Positions 235 through 63,801 of a DNA stretch of 64,000 nt are shown piece after piece (positions within the stretch are counted from its first letter, which is position 1; each line of letters begins with the position of its first letter). The DNA is taken from positions 62,001 through 126,000 of IMG/VR virus record IMGVR_UViG_3300038465_000091. One strand, written 5' to 3'. The notes under the pieces are model-generated. The model worked only from the letters and a program-made list of their open reading frames with translations, did not search any database and was not told the origin of the DNA. The position numbers and the translations under genes were made by a program.

Positions 235-309
235 TGGAGCACCCGGTCGGTGTCGAGCCGACTCATAATGGTTTTGCAGACCATTGCGTTCCCGTTTCGC
301 CACGGATGC
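235..309 (-). tRNA. tRNA-Cys(GCA)
   Basis: Cloverleaf GCATCCG...CGGGTGC-T-CCA; anticodon arm ATGGT-CTGCAAA-ACCAT; CCA encoded. Confidence 0.92.
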
Positions 310-313
310 AAAT

Positions 314-694
314 TTAAATGCGTTTCAATACCTGTGCTTCTTCAAAAGTCGCTAGGCGGTGATGATTAGCACAAAGCACATCACACTTTGCGGCTTCTCG
401 CTTCACTCGTACAAGGGACCAACCCTTCTTACGGGTTTCAGATAAATTCAGTTCTTTTGTCGCCCTATCGCGATGGGCAAAATCTAAACAGACTGGATGT
501 TCCCGCCATCCGCAAACTTTACAACCCATCTCCATTTTGTAAGCGTCCAGCCATTGACAAATAACGGCTATCCGCTTTTTATCATTCTTCCGCACCGCTT
601 TCAAGTGTCGTGCCTTCCGAACTGGATCGGCGTAATACCGCTTCCAGTACCCAGCACGATATTCCTTGCGCTTCTTGCAATCCTTCAACGGCAT
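314..694 (-). CDS. HNH-type (His-Me finger) endonuclease-like protein inserted in the tRNA cluster
   Basis: CKVCG...LDFAH...KCDVLCANHH motif; basic N-terminus; lies between two tRNA genes. Confidence 0.75.
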   Translation of the reverse strand: MPLKDCKKRKEYRAGYWKRYYADPVRKARHLKAVRKNDKKRIAVICQWLDAYKMEMGCKVCGWREHPVCLDFAHRDRATKELNLSETRKKGWSLVRVKREAAKCDVLCANHHRLATFEEAQVLKRI

Positions 695-699
695 AAATT

Positions 700-773
700 T
701 GGCGGGGATACGGAGAATTGAACTCCGATTTTATGATAGACAGTCAAATGTCCTACCCTTGAACGATATCCCC
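700..773 (-). tRNA. tRNA-Asp(GTC)
   Basis: GGGGATA/TATCCCC acceptor, G73, CCA; anticodon loop CT-GTC-TA. Confidence 0.9.
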
Positions 774-785
774 GTTCTTAAATTT

Positions 786-860
786 TGGTGGACACGGGGG
801 GATTTGAACCCCTTCTTTCACTTTGCAAGAGTGACGCATTCCCAGTTATGCTACCGGCCC
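786..860 (-). tRNA. tRNA-Ala(TGC) with irregular (bulged) acceptor stem
   Basis: TCACT-CTTGCAA-AGTGA anticodon arm; G3:U70; A73; CCA. Confidence 0.85.
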
Positions 861-1075
861 ATTTTTGCTGGTTTCGCGACACTCTTCGTGCCGTGTACCA
901 GATCAAACTCTAATTGCCGAACCACCATCAGGTCCATCTTGAACAGGGCTTCATCCTCGGTGTCGGCAGATGCGACTAGGCCGAGGGTGGGGTGAACCAC
1001 TTTGAATCCCCAATCATACCTCTCGACCTCCACGGTCGTTACCAGCTTGACGATGCGTTGTCTGTCGCGTTTCAT
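851..1075 (-). CDS. Small HicB-like (RNase H-fold antitoxin-like) protein
   Basis: ATG at 1075 after GGAG; VVHPTLGLVASADTEDEAL resembles the HicB P-x-L-x3-G/A-x-T-x-E-E-A signature. Confidence 0.45.
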   Translation of the reverse strand: MKRDRQRIVKLVTTVEVERYDWGFKVVHPTLGLVASADTEDEALFKMDLMVVRQLEFDLVHGTKSVAKPAKMGR

Positions 1076-1090
1076 CTTCTCTCCGAATCT

Positions 1091-1169
1091 TGGTACGCCG
1101 AGAGGGACTCGAACCCCCGATAATACTTGCTTGTAGGGCAAGTGGTTTCGCCGCTCACGCCATCGGCGT
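1091..1169 (-). tRNA. tRNA-Val(TAC)
   Basis: ACGCCGA/TCGGCGT acceptor, A73, CCA; anticodon arm CTTGC-CCTACAA-GCAAG; GGTTCGAGTCC T-arm. Confidence 0.9.
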
Positions 1170-1180
1170 AAATTTACCGC

Positions 1181-1214
1181 AAAAACAAAAAGGACGCCTT
1201 TTTAGGGGCGTCCT
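1181..1214 (-). terminator. Intrinsic terminator directly upstream of tRNA-Val (attenuator terminator)
   Basis: Minus strand AGGACGCC-CCTAAAAA-GGCGTCCT followed by TTTTGTTTTT. Confidence 0.85.
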
Positions 1215-1266
1215 CGGAATTCGTTGGTTTTAGGCTATTTAGCCACCCCAACCATCCAAGGACACC
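1207..1266 (-). promoter_or_regulatory. Antiterminator hairpin, mutually exclusive with the terminator
   Basis: GGTGTCCTTGGA (1255-1266, inside the leader ORF) pairs over 12 bp (2 G:U) with TCCGAGGACGCC (1207-1218), which contains the terminator 5' arm. The helix is extended by GTTGG/CCAAC and GGCTA/TAGCC. Confidence 0.8.
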
Positions 1267-1385
1267 ATATCTCCTACCGGCGCCGCGTCAGCGGCGACAG
1301 TACCGCGTTCGGCTGTACAAGCCGACAGGACCACGCCTGCACAGACGACCGTCACGACAACACCGTCTTGGAGAATGGAGTTCAT
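1239..1385 (-). CDS. Putative attenuator leader peptide (48 aa; Val/Ala/Gly/Asp/Cys-rich)
   Basis: MNSILQDGVVVTVVCAGVVLSACTAERGTVAADAAPVGDMVSLDGWGG*; the stop codon lies inside the antiterminator hairpin. Confidence 0.7.
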   Translation of the reverse strand: MNSILQDGVVVTVVCAGVVLSACTAERGTVAADAAPVGDMVSLDGWGG

Positions 1386-1397
1386 AAGCGTCTCTAT

Positions 1398-1427
1398 TTA
1401 CAATACTCGGTATTCAGGAAACTTGCA
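1398..1427 (-). promoter_or_regulatory. Sigma70-like promoter for the leader/tRNA operon
   Basis: Minus strand TTGCAA-17 nt-TATTGT, 12 nt upstream of the leader ATG. Confidence 0.55.
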
Positions 1428-1451
1428 ACAACTATTTTTCAGAAAAGTTTG

Positions 1452-1525
1452 AGGGCGCAACCACGGACGAACCGTGTGATCTTCTGTCTTGCTACGGCTA
1501 TCAGCCGCCTTCCGAACTGCGCCCC
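1452..1525 (-). ncRNA. Unidentified small structured RNA
   Basis: Closing stem GGGCGCA/TGCGCCC with internal hairpins CGGCT-GAT-AGCCG and CACGG-TTCGT-CCGTG. Confidence 0.4.
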
Positions 1526-1537
1526 GATGAAAATACA

Positions 1538-1688
1538 TCGGCTACAGTAACCCTGCACGTTGAACTGGTGCCAGCTAGAGTTCGGGACCGTTGCCACCGT
1601 TGCACCTGAGGTACACCGGATTATGCGGGTCATGACTCCCGTGACAGTGGGTTTTAGCCCTAGCCAGCCGTGCACAGTATGCAGCCGA
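1538..1688 (-). ncRNA. Unidentified ~150-nt rod-like structured RNA
   Basis: Nested helices TCGGCTGCA/TGTAGCCGA, TGCACG/CGTGCA, GCTAGGG/CTCTAGC, TGTCAC/GTGGCA; immediately downstream of tRNA-Ala. Confidence 0.5.
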
Positions 1689-1700
1689 ATCTCAAAATTT

Positions 1701-1775
1701 TGGTGGACCTAGAGGGAATTGAACCCCCGACATCAGCCTTGCAAAGGCTGCGTTCTCCCGCTGAACTATAGGCCC
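1701..1775 (-). tRNA. tRNA-Ala(TGC)
   Basis: GGGCCTA/TAGGTCC acceptor with G3:U70; CAGCC-TTTGCAA-GGCTG anticodon arm; CCA. Confidence 0.95.
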
Positions 1776-52922: not shown

Positions 52923-53618
52923 ATGAATTACTTAGACTTACAATACGGTGTTTGTGGCGTTTACGCAATTATGAATTGTGTCAATGGGCAGGTTTACATC
53001 GGTTCGGCGATGGACATCAAACGTCGTTGGGTCGTTCATGTTAACCGACTACGAGCGGAAACTTATACTACCCACACCAGTCCCATTCTTTGGTCGGCGT
53101 GGAAGAAGTACGGTGAATCCAGCTTCGATTTTTTCGTTCTTGAAGAAGTGCCTGACCGCCTCTGGTTGATGGTTCGAGAGCAACTTTGGCTCAACGATGT
53201 TCAACCGTGGAAGCGGGAAAATGGCTATAACATTCTTCCTACCGCTGAGAGTAGGCTAGGGCACATAGCATCCGAGGAAACGCGACGTAAATCATCTGTC
53301 GCTACAACGCGAGCTAAACTCGGGAAACCGCTCTCACAAGAACACTGTGAGGCTATTTCTAGAGGACATATCGGTAAACCTTGGACTGATAAACAACGGG
53401 AGGCTGATAGAAGTAGGGCTTACATAACGGAAGATTGGCGAGCCGCCAATTCTGTCCGTACTTCTGGCGAAACCAATCCATTCTTCGGTAAGACTCACCC
53501 ATCCGAACTCTTACCGACTCTTCAACAAGCCGCTGTATTGGGTCGCCATACTCGCTGGCACGTAAACCGTGGCATCGTCAATCCCGCTTGTGGACTTTGT
53601 GAAATAGGGGTTTCATAG
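52923..53618 (+). CDS. GIY-YIG homing endonuclease with NUMOD3 repeats
   Basis: GVYAIMNCVNGQVYIGS...RW..H...KYGE..F.F.VLE...RE...GYN; HIASEETRRK and NPFFGKTH. Confidence 0.9.
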   Translation: MNYLDLQYGVCGVYAIMNCVNGQVYIGSAMDIKRRWVVHVNRLRAETYTTHTSPILWSAWKKYGESSFDFFVLEEVPDRLWLMVREQLWLNDVQPWKRENGYNILPTAESRLGHIASEETRRKSSVATTRAKLGKPLSQEHCEAISRGHIGKPWTDKQREADRSRAYITEDWRAANSVRTSGETNPFFGKTHPSELLPTLQQAAVLGRHTRWHVNRGIVNPACGLCEIGVS

Positions 53619-53622
53619 GTAT

Positions 53623-54990
53623 ATGCTTGAACACCCGCCTATCATGTACCACGGGACGAGCCATGAGAATCGTCAAAGTATTTTGGAACATGGTTTGTTG
53701 CGATCCAAGGGCGAAGCTGCACAGATGGGCGGCTATGGTGGAATCTTTCTCTCCTCAAAATACACGCCTCAAGGCGGTGGAATTGATGAATGGGAAGTAG
53801 ACGTGAGGGGCCTTGATCTTGAAGAGGACGATACAACTATCCCCGAAGATGAAGAAGACACATGGTGGGTTACCTACGATGTGGACATACCACCAGAACG
53901 GTTAAAATTGATGTCAAAAGAAAAACAGGCATCTTCTAAGCTCTCATACATCTCGTCGCCGCAAGGCATTCTGGAACTTAACGTCATCCGTGACGCAAAC
54001 CCCCGCGTGACTTTGGTGTTAGACCTCGGAATTCCCAATTTTACCGTGTTTTCCATGACCTTACCGCTGGTGGAAAACCAGCCCCAAGCCATGTCCGAAC
54101 TCTTGGCGGAAGCTATTCATGTCCTCTGCGATGAGGTCGCGAACTTCATGCTCGTGATGGACTATCAGCAGGAAATAATAGTGCAAATTTATAGTACCGT
54201 GCTCAATTGCTACAAAGGAATGAGTAAGGAGACGGACTCAGACAAAACCACGGGCGACTTGACGGAGGACGATTTTGTTAAGACGTACGCGGGCACTTTC
54301 AACCTGCCTCAATCATTCGTGAATGAAACGCAAAACCGCGTAGTCACCGCAGCCAAAGTTATCAAGCGCCCACCGAAGTGCCGTAGGATTGAATTCTCGA
54401 CGGAGAAGCCCGCAAAACCCACGACAAGCGATGTGGCTCGGGTGATCCGTCAGTACCGAGGACGTTCGCTTAGGACACAGCCAAAGCCGCTGTTTGTTGT
54501 GGTATACGATCAAGTTGGTCGTCCTTCGGGCACGCTCCCGCTCGGCCCGCAGTTTAAGAACAAGTTGCTCAATTTGGTCAATAAGAGGGGCTCCGCAGAA
54601 TTCACTAACGCCGTCACGCTGGACAACGAACATGAGATGCGTTATCTTGCGGTGGACGGTATCCCCGGCACAATCACAATCGACGGTCGCATCTACAGAC
54701 CAACAGCCACGGCGGGGCTCGATACGGCACTTTACTCGGGGGATGAGGGCGACTGGTTGGTAAAGCTTATGGATGGGCGGATTGTAGGACCCTTCCCCGG
54801 GCGTCCATGCTTTATTGACTTACGGCGTCTGAACTACCCCATTCCGAAGAATCGTAACCGCTGGCATCTTTTGAGTGAGGGGGATATTCCCGATCCTGAA
54901 CCTGAAGAGCCCGAGGAAAGCGACGAAAATGGCGTATTAGAACCTGAGGGCGGTAGTCAGGACGAAAACGCGGGGAAAATTACCCTTTAG
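53623..54990 (+). CDS. Multidomain protein with N-terminal ADP-ribosyltransferase-like (Tpt1/KptA-fold) domain
   Basis: MYHGTS..N..SILEHGL...GIFLS...EVD...IPPERL. Confidence 0.55.
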   Translation: MLEHPPIMYHGTSHENRQSILEHGLLRSKGEAAQMGGYGGIFLSSKYTPQGGGIDEWEVDVRGLDLEEDDTTIPEDEEDTWWVTYDVDIPPERLKLMSKEKQASSKLSYISSPQGILELNVIRDANPRVTLVLDLGIPNFTVFSMTLPLVENQPQAMSELLAEAIHVLCDEVANFMLVMDYQQEIIVQIYSTVLNCYKGMSKETDSDKTTGDLTEDDFVKTYAGTFNLPQSFVNETQNRVVTAAKVIKRPPKCRRIEFSTEKPAKPTTSDVARVIRQYRGRSLRTQPKPLFVVVYDQVGRPSGTLPLGPQFKNKLLNLVNKRGSAEFTNAVTLDNEHEMRYLAVDGIPGTITIDGRIYRPTATAGLDTALYSGDEGDWLVKLMDGRIVGPFPGRPCFIDLRRLNYPIPKNRNRWHLLSEGDIPDPEPEEPEESDENGVLEPEGGSQDENAGKITL

Positions 54991-55018
54991 GACTATCCCC
55001 CGCTATAACGAGGACATC

Positions 55019-55648
55019 ATGCGTAATTTTGACCAATTCGGTAGCGTTGTGTCGGACGTGAACGTCAGCATCAAGCGACAGGACACGGGCGAGACCCTGT
55101 ATCAAGCTCACAACGTCATTGTAAACACTTCAAAATTTTTGTTCGCTCGTCTTATGGCGAACGTATTCCCCAATGACCCGAATCCTCCGTACCAGCAAGG
55201 GCACGAACCCCTGTACGGCGTGTGGGGCTTGGCTCTCGGCGCAGGTTCCGCACAGTGGGCTCCAGAGACACAGCCCGATCCGACGCCCGTGCAGACGGCA
55301 CTCGTCGCCGAGTTTCTCCGTAAAAAGTTGTCCAAAGTCAACTTCGTGGACAGCAATCAAAACCCTCTGAGTACGTTGAGTACCGTGGTTGATTTCCAAA
55401 CCACGATCAATGCGACCACGGACAACATCACGCAAGGCATCCGTGAGATGGGCTTGATCGGCGGCGGCACTTTCGGTACAAATCCACCAAGCACACAGAC
55501 ACTCATGGAGACGGCTCCGTATTTCAATCCGAGCGCCATTCCTCCGGGTCCTGCGAACAGTGTCATATTGGTAAATTATCTTACCCTACCGCCGCTCGTT
55601 CTCCCACCCGGCGTGAATGTAATCATCAGTTGGATTTTACAATTTTAG
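55019..55648 (+). CDS. Baseplate/tail-fibre attachment protein
   Basis: HNVIVN...LALGAG...TALVAE..RK...IREMGL.GG...ISWILQF. Confidence 0.65.
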   Translation: MRNFDQFGSVVSDVNVSIKRQDTGETLYQAHNVIVNTSKFLFARLMANVFPNDPNPPYQQGHEPLYGVWGLALGAGSAQWAPETQPDPTPVQTALVAEFLRKKLSKVNFVDSNQNPLSTLSTVVDFQTTINATTDNITQGIREMGLIGGGTFGTNPPSTQTLMETAPYFNPSAIPPGPANSVILVNYLTLPPLVLPPGVNVIISWILQF

Positions 55649-55684
55649 CGACTGAAAAAATCTGACTTCCTCAGTGTAGTTGTA

Positions 55685-55966
55685 GTGACTGAAAACATGC
55701 TTTCCTTTTGGCCCCACATTCCGTTCGCACACATAGCCAGTGCCGTCGCCGGCGGAATTCTGGGCTATCCGTTCAAGGCAGCTTGGGACTGGTGGATCGA
55801 GACGTTCTGGATCGGCTTCAAGCTGGGTATCAAAGAATCGGAAGGCGGCAGGCGACTCATAGCGGCTTTTAATCAAGGCAAAGCCGAGGCGGAAGCGAGG
55901 ACTCTGGCGAAGCATCCCGAACTCAAGTCTGCACTCGACGAAATACACGCGAAAGAGGCCCAGTAA
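55685..55966 (+). CDS. Small membrane protein
   Basis: Hydrophobic N-terminal half. Confidence 0.55.
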   Translation: MTENMLSFWPHIPFAHIASAVAGGILGYPFKAAWDWWIETFWIGFKLGIKESEGGRRLIAAFNQGKAEAEARTLAKHPELKSALDEIHAKEAQ

Positions 55967-56112
55967 TGGCATTTTTCAAACGGTTCGCAGCGAAGGTCAA
56001 CGAAGAGGATAACGTCGTCTGCACTGCGGAAGAAGTTGACGAAGTGGTGAAAGACCGCAAGAAGCGGAAGAAGAAAAAGAAGGAAGACGATTCCTCGGAC
56101 ACCGATTCCTAA
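55966..56112 (+). CDS. Small basic/acidic protein (48 aa)
   Basis: TAATG coupling; MAFFKRFAAKV...KKRKKKKKEDD. Confidence 0.5.
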   Translation: MAFFKRFAAKVNEEDNVVCTAEEVDEVVKDRKKRKKKKKEDDSSDTDS

Positions 56113-56140
56113 AATCGCTCCCGCCGCAGTATTAGACCCT

Positions 56141-57013
56141 ATGGACAATGTAGAATGCGGGGATAGTTTAGCGGTAAAACAGCCGACCCAATCGGAAATC
56201 GGGGGTTCAAATCCAGCCTCTCCGCTCCAATCTGCACGCCAACTTGCCGAGCAACGATTCAAGACCAATCCAGTAATGTGTTTCCAGCGACATCTAATTG
56301 AAGCTTCCGCCGAGCTTAATCCTCGGGAAAAATACCCTAAAGAATTCCTGCTTCACGAAGGTGTGCGGGAGATCACTCGTGCTGAGTGTGCGACATTCAT
56401 TGAGCAGTATGAATACCTCGGCACCCTCGGTCGCGGTAGCGTGTACTACGGGTTGTTCATGCCGAATGGCGAGATGGTTGGGGCCAACTGCTTCTGCACA
56501 AGTGGCGGCGGGATTGGGAACATTTGTGGGCCTGAGTACGCGGGTAAGACCGCTAACCTAGCCCGTGGGTGTTGTGTCCTCCACGCCCCCGTCAACGCGG
56601 GCTCGTTCTTTACTGCTCGTTCAATCAAGATGGCGTATGCGAAATACGGATGGCAAGTGTACTTTGCTTACAGTGACCCCAACGCCAGTGAGAACGGCAA
56701 GCTTTACAAAATCCTGAACTGGTACTATCTTGGCGCGGGCCTCAACCATAGTGGCGGGCATAGTGACTGGTATAAGGACGGCAACAGGATCAAAAGCTAC
56801 GCCGTGTTCCGCGATGGCGGCAAGGCCCTAGTGAAGTACGGCTATGAGCCGGGCACAGGCGGGCAATGGGCGTGGCTGCGAGCTAATGGTTGGGAGCAGA
56901 GAATTGATCCCGACAAAGGGAAATTCTGCTGGTTTGAGGGCAACAAACGCGAAGTACGAGCCGCAAAAGCGGCGTGTCGCTACCCCCTTGATCTACCATT
57001 CCCAGAAAAATAA
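56141..57013 (+). CDS. mom: Mom-like (GNAT-fold) DNA adenine modification protein
   Basis: VREI...FIEQYEYLG...YYGLF...LARGCC...PVNAGSFF...AYSDP...GKLYK..NWYYLG. Confidence 0.75.
   Translation: MDNVECGDSLAVKQPTQSEIGGSNPASPLQSARQLAEQRFKTNPVMCFQRHLIEASAELNPREKYPKEFLLHEGVREITRAECATFIEQYEYLGTLGRGSVYYGLFMPNGEMVGANCFCTSGGGIGNICGPEYAGKTANLARGCCVLHAPVNAGSFFTARSIKMAYAKYGWQVYFAYSDPNASENGKLYKILNWYYLGAGLNHSGGHSDWYKDGNRIKSYAVFRDGGKALVKYGYEPGTGGQWAWLRANGWEQRIDPDKGKFCWFEGNKREVRAAKAACRYPLDLPFPEK
56157..56229 (+). ncRNA. tRNA-Gly-like element embedded in frame in the 5' end of the mom-like gene
   Basis: GCGGGGA/TCTCCGC acceptor, U73, CCA; D-arm GTTT-AGCGGTA-AAAC; T-loop GGTTCAAATCC; shortened anticodon arm CCGA-CCCAA-TCGG. 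Confidence 0.8.
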
Positions 57014-59350: not shown

Positions 59351-61069
59351 ATGAACCCGCTTTTCCAGAAAAAGACAAACGACGAACAAGACCCCATCAT
59401 CCTGCCGCAAGATGATAACCAGCAAGGGGATATGCTCGATCCAGCTACCCAACAAGTTGTCGCTCCACCGCCCGTAGCTCCCGCCGAGGATGAGAAAGTC
59501 GTCGAACAGAGTCGGATGGCAGCCCAGAAAAGCGCGGCTGCTCATACCCCATGGGATGTCTACCTTCGAGGGAAATGGGTCAATCGTGTTTTTACGGTGC
59601 CGAACATGACTGCCGACGACGTGAAGCGTGGTCTGGTAGATCATGATGGTCTCAACCCAGCCATTGAAGTGCGGTCTGGACAGGGGCGAAACGTCCCGGG
59701 TAGTGTCCCACTCAATCGGATAGGCTCCAACCCCCTACTTCAAAAAAGGGGTGCGGGTGCACCTATTGGCATGGATCAGGATCAGCAGACCTGTCGCAGA
59801 TGCAAACAGCCGATTCAACAGGGCCAAATGGTTTCGTGGGAAAGTGGTAGTGAGACTCACGCGGGCGTCTGTCCACCTCCACCCCCAACCGCCGTAAAGG
59901 AGCAGAGCCGTCTCATGTTTCCTAAGGGGTATGAGCCAAAGCAACCGCCAACGGCCCCCCAGCGGCCCCAGAAGCCCCCTACGCAGCCCCAGTACGCTTC
60001 GGCTGAGAAAGTAGCCACACGACGTAAGATCAGCGGCTACGTGCCCGCCACAAGCTGGGGCGTACCGCAGGAATGCGCTCATCAAGTTGCCCATGCCCTT
60101 GCCAACGCGGGTGTGCGTGATTTTGACGTGGCGACGGACGAAAAACTGCATGTGGCATACTTTTCATTCGGCAACGAGGTCGAGATGGAGGTCAGCGCAG
60201 ATATTGTTTGTGAATACTTTGGTCCTCAGATCGCCGCATCCAAGGGCAAATGGATTGGTTGGCAGTGCCGTCCCGAGCGCCAACCGAGAGTGCCTGACGT
60301 GAACATGCCACTGAGCAAGATGAATAGCAAGCGGGCTGGCAGCCAAGGCACCCGTGAAGCCGTCGCCAAGTTGCAAAGACTCGGCATCAAGACTACGGCG
60401 GACCTCGACAAATGGATCAAGGAGCACCCGAAGACTGAGACCAAGGGACCCTACGCGGGCTCGCGGTCGCTCATGAGCCGTTACGACGCCCTGAACGAGC
60501 TTGTGGGCACCTTCGCCGCCACGTGGATTCTACACGATTTGGCGACCGACGCCGCTGTTAGGGAAGGGCTCCCCAAGAGAGGATTCTTCTCCCCCGAGGA
60601 TGCCAAGCGGTTCCGCGACGACAATCAGGGCAGCAACGTCGCTTTGAATCAGGATGAAGAGGGCAGCCAACTGTGGGAGAAAGTGCCCGATAACGAGTTA
60701 CTTAGGAAGAAAGAGGGGGCGGTTCCGCCTCCCCCACCTCAGCCGCCAGCTTCGCATGTCAGGGAAGCACCAGCACCTCGCAAACCCGCCCCGCCGCAGG
60801 GTTCGCCGAATGTCACCTTTCCATCGGACATGCCTGACATTTATATTGGAGGTGAGCCGCCACGAGGCGCACCAGCGGATTTCGGTGGGGCTGTCTTCCC
60901 CAATCCAAAGGGGTTAGCGCCAACGCTGGATACAGCCCCGCCTCCACCTCGGCCTGAGCTTAATGCAACCCATGAAATGGGCGTATATAAGGGCGATATG
61001 AAAATGGACATGACCAATGCAGACGTGTCGGACGTGGTGCCAAACCCATTGCAGCCCCGTGAACAGTAA
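59351..61069 (+). CDS. Proline-rich modular protein (probable head-associated protein)
   Basis: GAGG RBS then MNPLFQKK; short domains separated by low-complexity linkers. Confidence 0.7.
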   Translation: MNPLFQKKTNDEQDPIILPQDDNQQGDMLDPATQQVVAPPPVAPAEDEKVVEQSRMAAQKSAAAHTPWDVYLRGKWVNRVFTVPNMTADDVKRGLVDHDGLNPAIEVRSGQGRNVPGSVPLNRIGSNPLLQKRGAGAPIGMDQDQQTCRRCKQPIQQGQMVSWESGSETHAGVCPPPPPTAVKEQSRLMFPKGYEPKQPPTAPQRPQKPPTQPQYASAEKVATRRKISGYVPATSWGVPQECAHQVAHALANAGVRDFDVATDEKLHVAYFSFGNEVEMEVSADIVCEYFGPQIAASKGKWIGWQCRPERQPRVPDVNMPLSKMNSKRAGSQGTREAVAKLQRLGIKTTADLDKWIKEHPKTETKGPYAGSRSLMSRYDALNELVGTFAATWILHDLATDAAVREGLPKRGFFSPEDAKRFRDDNQGSNVALNQDEEGSQLWEKVPDNELLRKKEGAVPPPPPQPPASHVREAPAPRKPAPPQGSPNVTFPSDMPDIYIGGEPPRGAPADFGGAVFPNPKGLAPTLDTAPPPPRPELNATHEMGVYKGDMKMDMTNADVSDVVPNPLQPREQ

Positions 61070-61120
61070 GAAGTTAAATATTCCTAGCCAAAATCCTCAG
61101 ACTTCTGGTATCATGTAATA

Positions 61121-61390
61121 GATGGTCGTAAGCCCCGCAAGGGGTAAAAGGCACTGGTACTGATTTTCAGACAGGGGTTCGACTCCCCTCAGGTCCACCA
61201 TAAATTTTTGCACCACCTTATGGGCCTGCCCCGGTTTCGATGGAGACGGTATGGGATGGCAGCCAGCGACCCGAGCGCAAGGGTGTACCCTCGTTAAACA
61301 GGCATTCAAAAAAGTAAACGCTGAAGCTCCAAAGGCTTTCGCTGCTCATGCTTAATGAGCCAGACCCCGTGGGTCTGTTCCTCAACACGG
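61121..61390 (+). ncRNA. ssrA: Circularly permuted two-piece tmRNA; tag (A)AEAPKAFAAHA
   Basis: Acceptor piece ends ...GACAGGGGTTCGACTCCCCTCAGGTCCACCA (61200). A 21-nt spacer follows, then the coding piece starts GGGCCTG (61222), which pairs with CAGGTCC (G3:U70). Tag ORF at 61320-61355 follows GTAAAC. Outer boundaries are approximate. Confidence 0.9.
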
Positions 61391-61396
61391 CAAGAA

Positions 61397-61422
61397 CGCC
61401 CGCGCAAGCGGGCATTTTTGTT
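61397..61422 (+). terminator. Intrinsic terminator after tmRNA
   Basis: GCCCGC-GCAA-GCGGGC-ATTTTTG. Confidence 0.8.
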
Positions 61423-61467
61423 TCTGGTTGACAATCTGAATTCCAAAGGCTAGTATAGGGGCACATT

Positions 61468-62529
61468 ATGGCAAACGACAAGGTTAGGGAAGCACTCAAA
61501 GCCGCCGCGAGCTTCAAGGCACGCGGCATCAAGAAAGCCGCTCTGGGCGTAGTTGCGGAGTACGAAGCGAAGAAAGCCAAGGACTACGACGACATCAACG
61601 GCTCCAAAGACAAGTGTGCCGACTGCGGTGTCAAATCCGGCAAGCCCCACAAAGAATCCTGCAATGGTGGACTGCACGATATAAAGTCCAAGAAGGCCGC
61701 TCCCGGCGATCCGATCCAACGTGACCAACCCGCCGCCCAAGCCGACCCCGCCATCCCCGATCCGACTGCTCAACCTGCCGCTCCCGTTGCCCCACCCGTG
61801 GAAGAGGTCGAAGAGGCAGAGGAGACTCCCGAAGCTAAAGCCGCTCGCGTGCGTGAAGCACTTGAGACCGAGTTAGGCGACGACGATCTGGTGACGGCTG
61901 TCCTCGAATTTCTGGAAGCCGAAAAATTCGACTACGACGATTACAGCGTCGATGTCACGGATAACAGCGACGGCACAGCCACGGTCGCTGGCTACATCAT
62001 TGCCCCCAACGACGACATTCCAGAAAGCATCGCTCTGGCACAGGTCCGTAGCGATTTGGAAAGCGAGCCTGAGCTTTTCAATCAGGATTGGCTCCAAGGA
62101 CACATCGACGAGGTGCGCCTCCGTGACCATCTGTACTCAGACACGGAGGAAATGATCCGTGATTCCCCCGACTCTTATGGGTGGGTGCCCGGAGGCGGCG
62201 AAGAACTCGTCCGCTTTAACGCCGAGGGTGAAGAAGAGGATGACGGCGAGTACGATTCGGCTGGTGAGCCCATTGTAGAGGAGACCGAACCCTCCGACGA
62301 CTGGCTTGAAGAGAAGACCAATGAACTCCTCCGCTATCCCGTGCAATACCTGACGGACATGTTAGGCGAAGAGGACGGCATCAAACAGGCGATATCGATT
62401 GCTGGGATCGACATTAACGCAGCGGCAGAAGAAGCGGTTGCAGCCGATGGCTGGCAGCACTTCCTGTCCCGTTATGACGGAAACTCGTACGATCTCGCTT
62501 CTGGCGGGGTTTATTGGCGAGAAAATTAA
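61468..62529 (+). CDS. Acidic hypothetical protein with basic N-terminal leader
   Basis: 353-aa ORF; basic N-terminus with CxxC..H..C, acidic C-terminal domain ending HFLSRYDG. Confidence 0.75.
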   Translation: MANDKVREALKAAASFKARGIKKAALGVVAEYEAKKAKDYDDINGSKDKCADCGVKSGKPHKESCNGGLHDIKSKKAAPGDPIQRDQPAAQADPAIPDPTAQPAAPVAPPVEEVEEAEETPEAKAARVREALETELGDDDLVTAVLEFLEAEKFDYDDYSVDVTDNSDGTATVAGYIIAPNDDIPESIALAQVRSDLESEPELFNQDWLQGHIDEVRLRDHLYSDTEEMIRDSPDSYGWVPGGGEELVRFNAEGEEEDDGEYDSAGEPIVEETEPSDDWLEEKTNELLRYPVQYLTDMLGEEDGIKQAISIAGIDINAAAEEAVAADGWQHFLSRYDGNSYDLASGGVYWREN

Positions 62530-62530
62530 C

Positions 62531-62737
62531 ATGAGCCAAATCAGTCCCGTCTACCACGTAAATCGTCATGGTGGTGCGGCCTGTGAGCACTGTTTGGGTA
62601 TTGTCCGCTGCGCCTCGTGGTGCCTCACCAAGAACACTGAAATTTTCTACGCCTACGACATCCTTGTCCATCCAGAAACCCTGACCGAACAAGATAGAAT
62701 TACTCTTCACGCTCTCGGCGTGCTTTGGACTAACTAA
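62531..62737 (+). CDS. Small Cys/His-containing protein
   Basis: CEHC...C...C. Confidence 0.6.
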   Translation: MSQISPVYHVNRHGGAACEHCLGIVRCASWCLTKNTEIFYAYDILVHPETLTEQDRITLHALGVLWTN

Positions 62738-62763: not shown

Positions 62764-63009
62764 TAGCTCCGGTGACCGTGGGCAGCAGCCGTTTCTGATT
62801 CCGAAAGTATTCCCACGGGTGTATCTGACTTTGCCATGGGCAAAAGGGTTGCTGGTGCCCTCCGTGGTCGGTTCGCAAACACACCGTAAGCACCGCGATG
62901 GGTCGAAAGCGAACTAGGCCCTCCTTGGTTTCAGGAATAGGCTGAGGCGTCGGCGGTGGTCAGGCGGTTGAGCCATGGTGACCGAGACGGAACTCCATGG
63001 CCGGAGCTA
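62764..63009 (+). ncRNA. Unidentified ~245-nt structured RNA
   Basis: Terminal stem TAGCTCCGG/CCGGAGCTA starts right after a GGTATTAT promoter motif; several internal helices. Confidence 0.6.
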
Positions 63010-63024
63010 ATTTTAGGAGAAAGC

Positions 63025-63801
63025 ATGAATCTCAAGTTTTGGGAGTGGTTTAAGAAAAAACAGGAGACCGATCCAACTCTCCTCGATCCTTTCGAAGGCA
63101 GCGTACTCAAAGAGTATCAGGATGCCGTAGGAATACGGCGTATCCCGATGCAGGTCACTGATCGCCACGATCTCACCACGAGTGAAGTCGCCAACCCCGA
63201 CCTCGGTAAAGATGATGCCGAGACTCTCAAGAAGAAACTCAAGTCCGGCATCCACCAGTCTGTTATGACTGGTCCCGATACGCACAGAGTCAGCGGCGTG
63301 CGAGTAATATCGGAAGAGGGCGGCACTGTCGAGGTCATCAAAAAGATCGACAAGTCCAAGCTGTACGAACTTGGCTATGACATTACGGAAGAAAATGAAA
63401 CTTTCGTGAAGAACCTTGGATTAGAGCCTGAACCTTCGCTTTTCCTCGGACTCTCTCAAATACGGAAAAACGTGGAAGGTACGTCAGAGGAAGAGCGACT
63501 TCATTCAGAAGGCGTTGACTTCCATCACTACTCAGGTAAGCCTGCAAATCGTCCTTCGGAAATGCAGCCCAATGAACTAATGGGGGGTTCGGAGCCAGCC
63601 GAATCGTATCCGACTGCCGTGGCTGAACTTGTTGTGCCTGAACTGGAAGAAAGCATCAAGGCCAGAATTGAGGCATTCCACGCTGGAGCCAAGAATCATG
63701 ACCCCTCGTGCCCATGCTACGAGCATTGCATGGAGCATATCGACAAGTTGGGTCAGGAGTACGACTGCTTCCACGTCTGTAACTGCAAAGGGAAACAATG
63801 A
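63025..63801 (+). CDS. Hypothetical acidic protein with Cys/His-rich C-terminus
   Basis: AGGAG RBS, MNLKFWEW... Confidence 0.7.
   Translation: MNLKFWEWFKKKQETDPTLLDPFEGSVLKEYQDAVGIRRIPMQVTDRHDLTTSEVANPDLGKDDAETLKKKLKSGIHQSVMTGPDTHRVSGVRVISEEGGTVEVIKKIDKSKLYELGYDITEENETFVKNLGLEPEPSLFLGLSQIRKNVEGTSEEERLHSEGVDFHHYSGKPANRPSEMQPNELMGGSEPAESYPTAVAELVVPELEESIKARIEAFHAGAKNHDPSCPCYEHCMEHIDKLGQEYDCFHVCNCKGKQ

What the first reader, a model, noticed from the sequence alone, without database searches (positions are those of the whole stretch)
61107..61422. Circularly permuted (two-piece) tmRNA in a phage, with a tag ending -AHA
Seen: a promoter motif, the acceptor piece ending in CCA (61200), a 21-nt intervening segment, the coding piece from GGGCCTG (61222), the tag AEAPKAFAAHA* and a terminator. 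The gene is very compact (~270 nt). Established: permuted tmRNAs are known from alphaproteobacteria, some betaproteobacteria and some cyanobacteria, and canonical tags end in -LAA/-AA for ClpXP. Inference: this is either a host clue or an independent permutation in a phage lineage. The His at the penultimate position might change the proteolytic fate of rescued proteins.
Basis: partly seen in the sequence, partly recalled or inferred. Interest (0 to 1): 0.68.

Follow-up and report, generated by a model that had tools for sequence, protein, structure and literature searches.

The report
Two-piece tmRNA in peat jumbo phage
A giant phage from peat soil, related to a phage that infects Acidobacteriota, carries a genuine circularly permuted ribosome-rescue RNA (tmRNA) gene whose degradation tag ends unusually in -AHA; phage genes of this kind are already known, so this is a new variant, not a new kind.

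Summary
ARAGORN calls a permuted tmRNA at 61104-61446 with the tag AEAPKAFAAHA. Rfam's tmRNA_permuted model scores 69.7 bits against a cut-off of 47. Six more variants of the gene exist in related jumbo phages. Across them the acceptor stem, T arm, inter-piece helix P2 and stop-codon hairpin co-vary, G3:U70 never changes, and most tag codons differ only synonymously.

The window lies in a 223.5-kb IMG/VR phage record from peat and permafrost. Its only clear isolated relative is Tunturiibacter phage Tunturi_5, a 309-kb myovirus of Acidobacteriota. Tunturi_5 carries an unannotated homologue of the gene.

Sampled Acidobacteriota have one-piece tmRNAs (144 of 151 genomes), so the permuted form is not a host clue. 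The gene fails all three lineage models: alpha gives no hit, beta 49.7 of 84 bits, cyano 45.2 of 70 bits. Its origin, including an independent permutation, stays open.

Permuted tmRNAs in phages are already published and are common in IMG/VR. The -AHA ending is unusual: none of 51 other phage tags has it. It is derived within the clade, whose more distant members end in -MAA or -AAA.

Processing into two pieces and tagging were not shown. No metatranscriptome contig covered the gene.

The parts
61085..61114 (+). Promoter-like site TAGCCA-18-TATCAT with TG before the -10 element. The start of transcription is inferred near 61121.
   Evidence: A TATCAT or TATAAT -10 element sits at a similar distance upstream of GAUGGUCGU in relatives L025, L026, L030 and L037.
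61121..61200 (+). Acceptor piece, the 3' half of the tRNA-like domain. Its 5' end is inferred; its 3' end is the encoded CCA.
   Evidence: The 5' motif GAUGGUCGU is identical in six variants.
61124..61129 (+). GGUCGU, the top strand of helix P2. It pairs with GCGACC at 61266-61271 in the coding piece.
   Evidence: This pairing appears in the cofolds and in the single-strand fold. It holds in six variants.
61132..61145 (+). Variable hairpin (GCCCC-GCAA-GGGGU) inserted in the P2 3' strand. It is much longer in L026, L030 and L031.
   Evidence: compensatory changes occur in the stem.
61150..61169 (+). P2 3' strand. It pairs with the coding piece at 61241-61259.
   Evidence: The cofold energy gain has z -3.7 against shuffles for the window.
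61173..61189 (+). T arm (AGGGG-UUCGACU-CCCCU).
   Evidence: Four of its 5 pairs show compensatory changes among variants.
61190..61200 (+). Acceptor 3' strand CAGGUCC, discriminator A, and the encoded CCA.
   Evidence: Three of the 7 acceptor pairs co-vary; G3:U70 is invariant in 7 variants.
61201..61221 (+). Intervening segment, presumed to be excised. It is 21 nt here and 32-81 nt in relatives, and it always ends in U before G1.
61222..61423 (+). Coding piece: acceptor 5' strand 61222-61228, D-loop analogue 61229-61240, P2 5' strand 61241-61271, then a hairpin/pk1 region up to about 61305.
61320..61358 (+). Tag reading frame AEAPKAFAAHA (resume codon GCU 61320-61322), followed by the stops TAA and TGA.
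   Evidence: Six of 11 codons vary only synonymously among relatives, including CAT/CAC for His. The upstream UAAAC context is shown.
61344..61360 (+). Hairpin enclosing the stop codon (GCUCAU-GCUUA-AUGAGC), equivalent to tmRNA helix 5.
   Evidence: A comparable hairpin can be drawn in all 7 variants, with changed stem sequences.
61361..61388 (+). Post-tag hairpin (61361-61377) and the conserved UUCCUCAACAC stretch. A pseudoknot here is possible but unresolved.
   Evidence: The element is conserved out to Tunturi_5.
61398..61423 (+). Intrinsic terminator (GCCCGC-GCAA-GCGGGC followed by a U run).

Best explanation
This is a functional, circularly permuted ssrA gene of a lytic jumbo myophage of the Tunturi_5-like clade, whose likely hosts are peat Acidobacteriota.

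Shown by sequence and comparison:
- One transcription unit, from a promoter to a terminator, encodes first the 3' half of the tRNA-like domain ending in CCA, then a spacer of variable length, then the 5' half.
- The 5' half is followed by a long helix-P2 strand, a short tag frame, a stop-codon hairpin and a conserved 3' domain.

Inferred from what is known of two-piece tmRNAs:
- RNase P cuts before G1 of the coding piece, and the spacer is trimmed back to the encoded CCA.
- The two RNAs stay together through the 7-bp acceptor stem and P2.
- Host AlaRS charges the RNA through G3:U70, and host SmpB and EF-Tu deliver it to stalled ribosomes.
- Translation resumes at GCU, so the rescued peptide receives (A)AEAPKAFAAHA.

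Likely role (inferred): to keep ribosomes free while host mRNA is being destroyed during infection. The tag's C-terminus departs from the host's -LAA, so tagged proteins may be handled by proteases differently, or more slowly, than host-tagged ones.
For: - Detection: ARAGORN calls a permuted tmRNA. RF04321 scores 69.7 bits against a cut-off of 47.
- Relatives: seven distinct variants exist, namely the window, L025, L026, L030, L037, L031 and Tunturi_5.
- Covariation: in the tRNA-like domain plus P2, 247 of 262 cells are canonical pairs, and 18 of 40 pairs show changes on both sides. With partners slid by 1-3 columns the figures are 99-134 canonical cells and 3-8 pairs. The maximum over 500 column shuffles is 226 cells and 16 pairs. 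G3:U70 is invariant.
- Inter-piece duplex: the energy gain has z from -1.8 to -3.7 in 6 of 7 variants.
- Tag: codons differ mostly at synonymous third positions (GCT/GCC/GCA, CAT/CAC).
- Spacer: it varies from 21 to 81 nt while both flanks stay conserved.
- Stop-codon hairpin: it is kept in all 7 variants through compensatory changes.
- Transcription signals: promoter-like and terminator-like sites bracket the gene.
- Activity in nature: neighbouring phage genes appear in four peat metatranscriptomes.
- Host dependence: neither this record nor the complete Tunturi_5 genome encodes SmpB.
Against: - No RNA evidence for the gene itself. Metatranscriptome contigs cover the flanking genes but not 61104-61446. 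These are contigs of standard libraries, so this is weak evidence.
- The single-sequence fold is only modestly better than shuffles (z -1.86).
- The window scores below the cut-offs of all three lineage models.
- The pseudoknots could not be resolved.
- The P2 cofold of L037 is no better than shuffles.
- Neither the role in infection nor the fate of tagged proteins was tested.
Confidence: 0.85

Rival explanations
1. Decoy or inhibitor. The phage RNA competes for SmpB, AlaRS or ribosomes and shuts down the host's trans-translation instead of tagging proteins. This is what was reported for the CDS-less tmRNA-like RNA of mycobacteriophage DS6A.
For: The DS6A precedent is cited in PMC11915505. The phage encodes no SmpB of its own, so it must draw on the host's pool.
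Against: The tag frame is intact in all 7 variants. It varies mostly synonymously and keeps its stop-codon hairpin. That pattern is expected only if the frame is translated.
Confidence: 0.07
2. Re-targeted tagging. The RNA rescues ribosomes, but the -AHA end is a weakened or altered degron. Tagged products would escape ClpXP, or go to another protease such as Lon, FtsH or Tsp, sparing the host's protease capacity or sparing truncated phage proteins.
For: The -AAHA ending is kept in 5 variants with synonymous CAT/CAC codons. More distant clade members end in -MAA or -AAA. None of 51 other phage permuted-tmRNA tags ends in -AHA, and 41 end in -LAA. Acidobacterial host tags end in -LAA, -YAA or -VAA. 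From my own knowledge: ClpX recognition of the E. coli tag depends on the last three residues and the free carboxylate.
Against: No protease data exist for Acidobacteriota. The phage record encodes neither ClpP nor SspB. Part of the His codon lies in the stop-codon hairpin, so RNA structure also constrains it.
Confidence: 0.3
3. Not a working gene. It would be a chance juxtaposition, an attP-like remnant of host ssrA, or the same artefact that makes RF04321 fire on a tRNA gene followed by a standard tmRNA gene.
For: RF04321 does give false positives of 49.6-58 bits in Acidobacteriota, where tRNA-Asp directly precedes a one-piece tmRNA gene. The window's score of 69.7 bits is not far above these.
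Against: In the window there is no tRNA upstream. There is also no T arm or CCA downstream of the tag: RF00023 gives at most 24.7 bits. The upstream piece pairs with the downstream piece, and the pairs co-vary. The two acceptor strands change together in four different ways. The gene is kept in phages whose neighbouring protein is only 59-72% identical.
Confidence: 0.03

Closest known systems
Two-piece (permuted) tmRNAs of phages, such as OM43 phage Melnitz and pelagimyophages (PMC9004378)
   Same: A permuted ssrA gene carried by a lytic myophage and found by ARAGORN. In Melnitz too, the phage's tmRNA type does not match that of its host.
   Different: Those are marine, and Melnitz's gene groups with the alphaproteobacterial lineage and carries a glutamine riboswitch. 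This gene gives no alpha-model hit at all, comes from peat jumbo phages of probable Acidobacteriota hosts, and has a short tag ending in -AHA.
Betaproteobacterial two-piece tmRNA (Rfam RF01850)
   Same: It is the best-scoring lineage model. The T arm and acceptor region are 93% identical over 30 nt to a genuine beta-type gene. Piece sizes and spacer length are similar.
   Different: The window scores 49.7 bits and its relatives 47-51 bits, against a cut-off of 84. Genuine bacterial examples score 169-296 bits. For the window, only the tRNA-like core aligns.
Alphaproteobacterial two-piece tmRNA (Caulobacter; Rfam RF01849)
   Same: The same overall design: acceptor piece, spacer, coding piece, held together by P1 and P2. 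The piece sizes are comparable (Caulobacter's about 82 + 210 nt is from my memory of Keiler et al. 2000).
   Different: There is no RF01849 match at E <= 10. A genuine alpha gene scores 146 bits on RF04321, against 69.7 here.
Standard one-piece tmRNA of Acidobacteriota, the probable host phylum
   Same: The tRNA-like domain (24 + 36 nt) of clade members L037, L030, L031 and Tunturi_5 is 95%, 88%, 82% and 83% identical to the best acidobacterial sequence, and their top three matches are all acidobacterial.
   Different: The host genes are one-piece (RF00023 at 95-213 bits), with four pseudoknots in the model and tags ending -LAA, -YAA or -VAA. The window's own tRNA-like domain is only 75% identical at best.

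Membership tests
tmRNA (any form) | tRNA-Ala-like acceptor stem with G3:U70, discriminator A and a 3' CCA | tested here: met
   GGGCCUG pairs with CAGGUCC, then A and CCA. G3:U70 is invariant in 7 variants while 3 other acceptor pairs co-vary.
tmRNA (any form) | T arm with the GGUUCGAnUCC-type loop, and a D-loop analogue (GGnUUCGA) after the 5' acceptor strand | tested here: met
   Four of the 5 T-stem pairs co-vary.
tmRNA (any form) | A short tag reading frame that starts at a GCN resume codon and ends at a stop codon in or next to a hairpin | tested here: met
   Codon variation is synonymous at 6 of 11 codons. The stop-codon hairpin is kept in 7 variants.
tmRNA (any form) | Acts together with SmpB | not testable with these tools
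   No SmpB gene in this 223.5-kb record (71% complete) or in the complete Tunturi_5 genome. Use of the host's SmpB is inferred.
Permuted (two-piece) tmRNA, Rfam RF04321 | Score at or above the gathering score, with the gene order acceptor piece, spacer, coding piece | tested here: met
   69.7 bits against 47. Relatives score 52.9-86.4 bits. The known false-positive arrangement, a tRNA followed by a one-piece tmRNA, was excluded.
Permuted (two-piece) tmRNA | The transcript is cut into two RNAs held together by base pairing | not testable with these tools
   Only contigs of metatranscriptomes were available, and none covers the gene. The inter-piece pairing itself is supported by covariation.
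Alphaproteobacterial lineage (RF01849) | Score of at least 50 bits on the lineage model | tested here: not met
   No match at E <= 10.
Betaproteobacterial lineage (RF01850) | Score of at least 84 bits on the lineage model | tested here: not met
   49.7 bits, model positions 77-166 only. Genuine members score 169-296 bits.
Cyanobacterial lineage (RF01851) | Score of at least 70 bits on the lineage model | tested here: not met
   45.2 bits, model positions 54-122 only.
Standard one-piece tmRNA (RF00023) | Score of at least 47 bits with the 5' and 3' ends in the normal order | tested here: not met
   Best local matches are 24.7 and 16.2 bits.

The most novel reading that the evidence does not exclude
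The Tunturi_5-like jumbo phages carry a fourth, independently permuted tmRNA lineage. It would have arisen inside a phage from a captured one-piece acidobacterial ssrA. One subclade then evolved an -AHA tag end that changes which protease, if any, removes the rescued proteins.
Probability: 0.2. Interest if true: 0.6.

Novelty: new variant of a known kind. Interest (0 to 1): 0.4.

Why it matters
- It extends phage-borne two-piece tmRNAs from mostly marine phages to soil jumbo phages. The likely host phylum, Acidobacteriota, has only one-piece tmRNAs, so the gene's form cannot be used to guess the host.
- A cultured phage-host pair already carries an unannotated homologue: Tunturi 5 on Tunturiibacter psychrotolerans. 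The basic questions can therefore be tested at the bench: is the RNA cut in two, does it tag proteins, and does it help the phage?
- The conserved -AHA tag end offers a natural test of how the last residues of the tag decide the fate of rescued proteins.
- As a by-product, the general Rfam model for permuted tmRNAs fires above its cut-off on tRNA-Asp followed by a one-piece tmRNA gene. This matters for automated annotation.

Tried and rejected
- DNA searches against 50,697 phage records found only a 39-nt T-arm match for the gene and nothing for 19 kb of the window. The relative Tunturi_5 was found only through proteins.
- A clade-specific post-tag motif, searched in one genome for each of 185,579 species, gave 18 places. 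None holds a tmRNA gene, so no bacterial source lineage was found. This was an exact-pattern search and is therefore narrow.
- RF04321 matches over the cut-off in 5 of 151 Acidobacteriota looked at first like host permuted genes. They are tRNA-Asp followed by a standard tmRNA gene.
- The origin tests are inconclusive. I compared tRNA-like-domain identity and ran BLAST against 38 acidobacterial, 11 other and 4 permuted bacterial tmRNAs. Four clade members are closest to Acidobacteriota, while the window's subclade is closest to a beta-type gene and to Variovorax. The comparison set is small and unbalanced.
- Failing the lineage models is not unique to this clade. Nine of 50 other viral permuted tmRNAs also fail both the alpha and beta cut-offs, although most score higher than this one.
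- TAG recoding was considered because the genome has a tRNA with anticodon CUA. It was not supported: ORF coverage is 0.868 under code 11 and 0.876 with TAG read as sense, no more than for the other stop codons.
- The pseudoknots pk1 and a possible post-tag knot could not be settled by hand or by folding.
- Metatranscriptome contigs did not cover the gene. This says nothing firm about expression.
- Neither ClpP, SspB nor SmpB is encoded in the record.
- The more distant relatives L033 and L034 have no tmRNA gene within 4 kb of the neighbouring gene's homologue.

Full report
**1. What is in the sequence**

Region 61085-61423 (+ strand) reads as one small transcription unit.

- A promoter-like site lies at 61085-61114: TAGCCA, 18 nt, TATCAT, preceded by TG.
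- From about 61121 runs an 80-nt stretch that ends in a T arm (61173-61189), an acceptor 3' strand CAGGUCC, a discriminator A and an encoded CCA (61198-61200).
- After 21 nt (61201-61221) comes GGGCCUG (61222-61228). It is the exact partner of the 3' strand and gives G3:U70, the alanine identity pair.
- Then follow a GGUUUCGA D-loop analogue, a long purine-rich strand (61241-61271) and a hairpin region.
- The frame GCU GAA GCU CCA AAG GCU UUC GCU GCU CAU GCU (61320-61352) is followed by TAA TGA.
- Next come a hairpin around the stop codon (61344-61360), a second hairpin (61361-61377) and a conserved UUCCUCAACAC stretch.
- The unit ends in an intrinsic terminator (61398-61413 plus a U run).

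ARAGORN calls this a permuted tmRNA with the tag AEAPKAFAAHA. Rfam's tmRNA_permuted model (RF04321) gives 69.7 bits against a cut-off of 47.

**2. Is it more than a look-alike?**

This needed care. RF04321 also fired above its cut-off (49.6-58 bits) in 5 of 151 Acidobacteriota genomes. There the match was only a tRNA-Asp gene followed directly by the 5' end of an ordinary one-piece tmRNA gene.

The window differs in every relevant respect:

- There is no tRNA upstream.
- There is no T arm or CCA downstream of the tag. The standard model RF00023 reaches only 24.7 and 16.2 bits locally.
- The upstream piece pairs with the downstream piece.

Six further distinct variants of the gene were collected. 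Five come from related IMG/VR contigs of 11 to 455 kb: L025, L026, L030, L037 and L031. In L025, L026, L030 and L031 the gene sits just upstream of the homologue of ORF 61468-62529; L037 was found through the tag motif, and its neighbours were not compared. The sixth comes from the isolate Tunturi_5.

I aligned the tRNA-like domain plus helix P2:

| Measure | Observed | Partners slid by 1-3 columns | Maximum of 500 column shuffles |
|---|---|---|---|
| Canonical cells (of 262) | 247 | 99-134 | 226 |
| Pairs changed on both sides (of 40) | 18 | 3-8 | 16 |

Further points from the comparison:

- The acceptor stem occurs in five versions that always match their partner strand: GGGCCUG, GGGCUCG, GGGGGCG, GGGCGUG and GGGCCCG. 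G3:U70 never changes.
- The conserved 5' motif GAUGGUCGU pairs with GCGACC or ACGACC of the coding piece and forms the top of P2.
- The energy gain from pairing the two pieces exceeds shuffles in 6 of 7 variants, with z from -1.8 to -3.7.
- The spacer between CCA and G1 varies from 21 to 81 nt, with little conservation between subgroups. It always ends in U before G1. This fits a segment that is cut out and discarded.
- Tag codons differ mainly at synonymous third positions (GCT/GCC/GCA, CAT/CAC).
- The hairpin around the stop codon is kept through compensatory changes in all seven variants.

Together this is the signature of an RNA that is both folded and translated. Two points are weaker. 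The single-sequence fold is only modestly better than shuffles (z -1.86). The pseudoknots could not be resolved.

**3. What carries it**

- The window is bases 62001-126000 of a 223,506-bp IMG/VR virus record, estimated 71% complete. The record has 53% G+C and 37 tRNA genes.
- Near-identical DNA occurs in peat and permafrost metagenomes from many studies.
- Among 50,697 phage records, the only clear relative is Tunturiibacter phage Tunturi_5 (PP885688.1), a 308,711-bp myovirus isolated on Tunturiibacter psychrotolerans (Acidobacteriota) from Arctic tundra soil. Identities are helicase 49%, baseplate wedge 44.6% and a tail protein 38.7%. The tail protein matched Tunturi_5 only (PMC11924767).
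- Tunturi_5 has a homologous permuted tmRNA gene: RF04321 gives 86.4 bits at 157899-158195 on the minus strand, in the unannotated gap between gp218 and gp219.
- ARAGORN misses that gene, and the paper describing the phage does not mention tmRNA.
- Its tag is long, 34 residues as read from the Rfam alignment, and ends in -AFAMAA. Its post-tag domain is clearly the same as in the window.

**4. Host clue or not**

The probable host phylum uses one-piece tmRNAs.

- 144 of 151 sampled Acidobacteriota genomes have a standard tmRNA above the cut-off.
- The tmRNA database counts 1589 standard tmRNAs among 1595 in that phylum (PMC11915505, supplementary table).
- Acidobacterial tags end in -LAA, -YAA or -VAA.

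So the permuted form is not a mirror of the host. This resembles phage Melnitz, whose tmRNA type also does not match its host's (PMC9004378). Neither this record nor the complete Tunturi_5 genome encodes SmpB, so the RNA must work with the host's protein.

**5. Which lineage**

| Lineage model | Window score | Cut-off |
|---|---|---|
| Alpha (RF01849) | no match at E <= 10 | 50 |
| Cyano (RF01851) | 45.2 bits | 70 |
| Beta (RF01850) | 49.7 bits | 84 |

- In the window, the beta and cyano matches cover only the tRNA-like core. Relatives score 47-51 bits on the beta model.
- Genuine beta genes score 169-296 bits on RF01850. A genuine alpha gene scores 146 bits on RF04321.
- As a control, I tested 50 other viral contigs that carry ARAGORN-called permuted tmRNAs. 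35 pass the beta cut-off and 25 the alpha cut-off, and 9 pass neither. Being unassignable is therefore uncommon among phage genes but not unique.
- The tRNA-like domains of L037, L030, L031 and Tunturi_5 are closest to acidobacterial one-piece tmRNAs (95, 88, 82 and 83% over 60 nt). The window's subclade is closest to a beta-type gene and to Variovorax (75-78%). BLAST gave similarly mixed, weak signals.
- The comparison set was small, and this domain is constrained by host factors.

I therefore leave the origin open. An independent permutation of a captured host gene is possible but not shown.

**6. The tag**

Tags within the clade:

| Member | Tag |
|---|---|
| Window | AEAPKAFAAHA |
| L025, L026 | ATAPKAMAAHA |
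| L030, L037 | ANAPKAMAAHA |
| L031 | ANAPKAMAMAAAA (by homology; ARAGORN extends it upstream) |
| L214 | AETPAYAMAA |
| Tunturi_5 | ends in ...RAFAMAA |

- The -AHA end is therefore a derived state of one subclade, and its His codon varies synonymously (CAT/CAC).
41 end in -LAA and none in -AHA; the nearest is one tag ending in -ANA.
- From my own knowledge: ClpX reads the last three residues and the carboxylate of the E. coli tag, and variants of those residues tune degradation rates. A changed fate for tagged proteins is thus a reasonable idea, but nothing here tests it.
- The record encodes neither ClpP nor SspB.

**7. Expression**

Four peat metatranscriptomes hold contigs from the neighbouring genes (59444-59661, 61507-62088, 62318-62536), so the phage is active in nature. 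None covers the tmRNA gene. These are assembled contigs of ordinary libraries, which capture small structured RNAs poorly and cannot show ends. The result is neutral.

**8. Comparison with what is known, and verdict**

tmRNAs in huge phages are published (PMC7162821), and so are two-piece tmRNAs in phages (PMC9004378). The tmRNA database lists 79 phage sequences.

The kind is therefore known. What is new here:

- the setting, in soil jumbo phages of a phylum that has one-piece tmRNAs;
- an overlooked copy in a cultured phage;
- the distance from all three described lineages;
- the -AHA tag end.

I rate it a new variant of a known kind, of moderate interest.

Noticed in passing
window 62773-62921 (+): A conserved intergenic element between ORF 62399-62737 and ORF 62956-63801. 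It is very abundant in one peat metatranscriptome (contig depth 115) and present in a second. Identity is 90-94% in L025 and L026 and 72% in the distant L031. RNAalifold predicts 33 pairs, 7 of them with compensatory changes. There is no Rfam match at E <= 1. It is a candidate abundant phage small RNA of unknown kind.
   Followed up: partly
G000:C1:129385-129543 (about 3.4 kb beyond the window's end); also L031:8144-8594: A tRNA with anticodon CUA, an amber suppressor that ARAGORN labels Pyl, lies next to an odd tRNA-like gene with a four-base 'ctag' anticodon. ORF statistics give no sign that TAG is recoded in this genome. Read-through of TAG stops would raise ribosome stalling at mRNA ends, so a functional link to the phage tmRNA is conceivable but was not tested.
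   Followed up: partly
L124-L128 (Acidobacteriota genomes G123, G099, G087, G060, G077): Rfam RF04321 (tmRNA_permuted) scores 49.6-58 bits, above its cut-off of 47, on a tRNA-Asp gene directly followed by a standard one-piece tmRNA gene. This is a systematic false positive. It may bear on the few 'permuted' entries listed for phyla that otherwise have one-piece tmRNAs.
   Followed up: yes
PP885688.1 157899-158195 (-), = L099:1501-1797: The cultured jumbo phage Tunturi_5 has an unannotated permuted tmRNA gene (RF04321, 86.4 bits) between gp218 and gp219. ARAGORN does not find it, and the paper describing the phage does not mention it.
   Followed up: yes
G000:C1:175126-178608 (+), 200688-203201 (-), 53038-56238 (-): Three large proteins (1160, 837 and 1066 aa) carry Ice_binding-like domains (PF11999, E 6e-24 to 4e-61) in a phage from peat and permafrost. 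They could be fibre or adhesin modules; this was not examined further.
   Followed up: no
window 56141-57013 (+): A 290-aa protein matches the Mom family (PF25680; 35.8 bits against a cut-off of 27.1). This hints at a DNA modification function.
   Followed up: no
window 235-1775 (-) and G000 as a whole: Five tRNA genes lie at the window's start, and the 223.5-kb record has 37 in all, in three clusters. Tunturi_5 is reported to have 43.
   Followed up: no
L214 (IMGVR_UViG_3300029911_000060): A further permuted tmRNA has the same 5' design: AUGGUUGU followed by a GCAA-loop hairpin. Its tag is AETPAYAMAA, so it is probably a more distant member of the same clade.
   Followed up: partly
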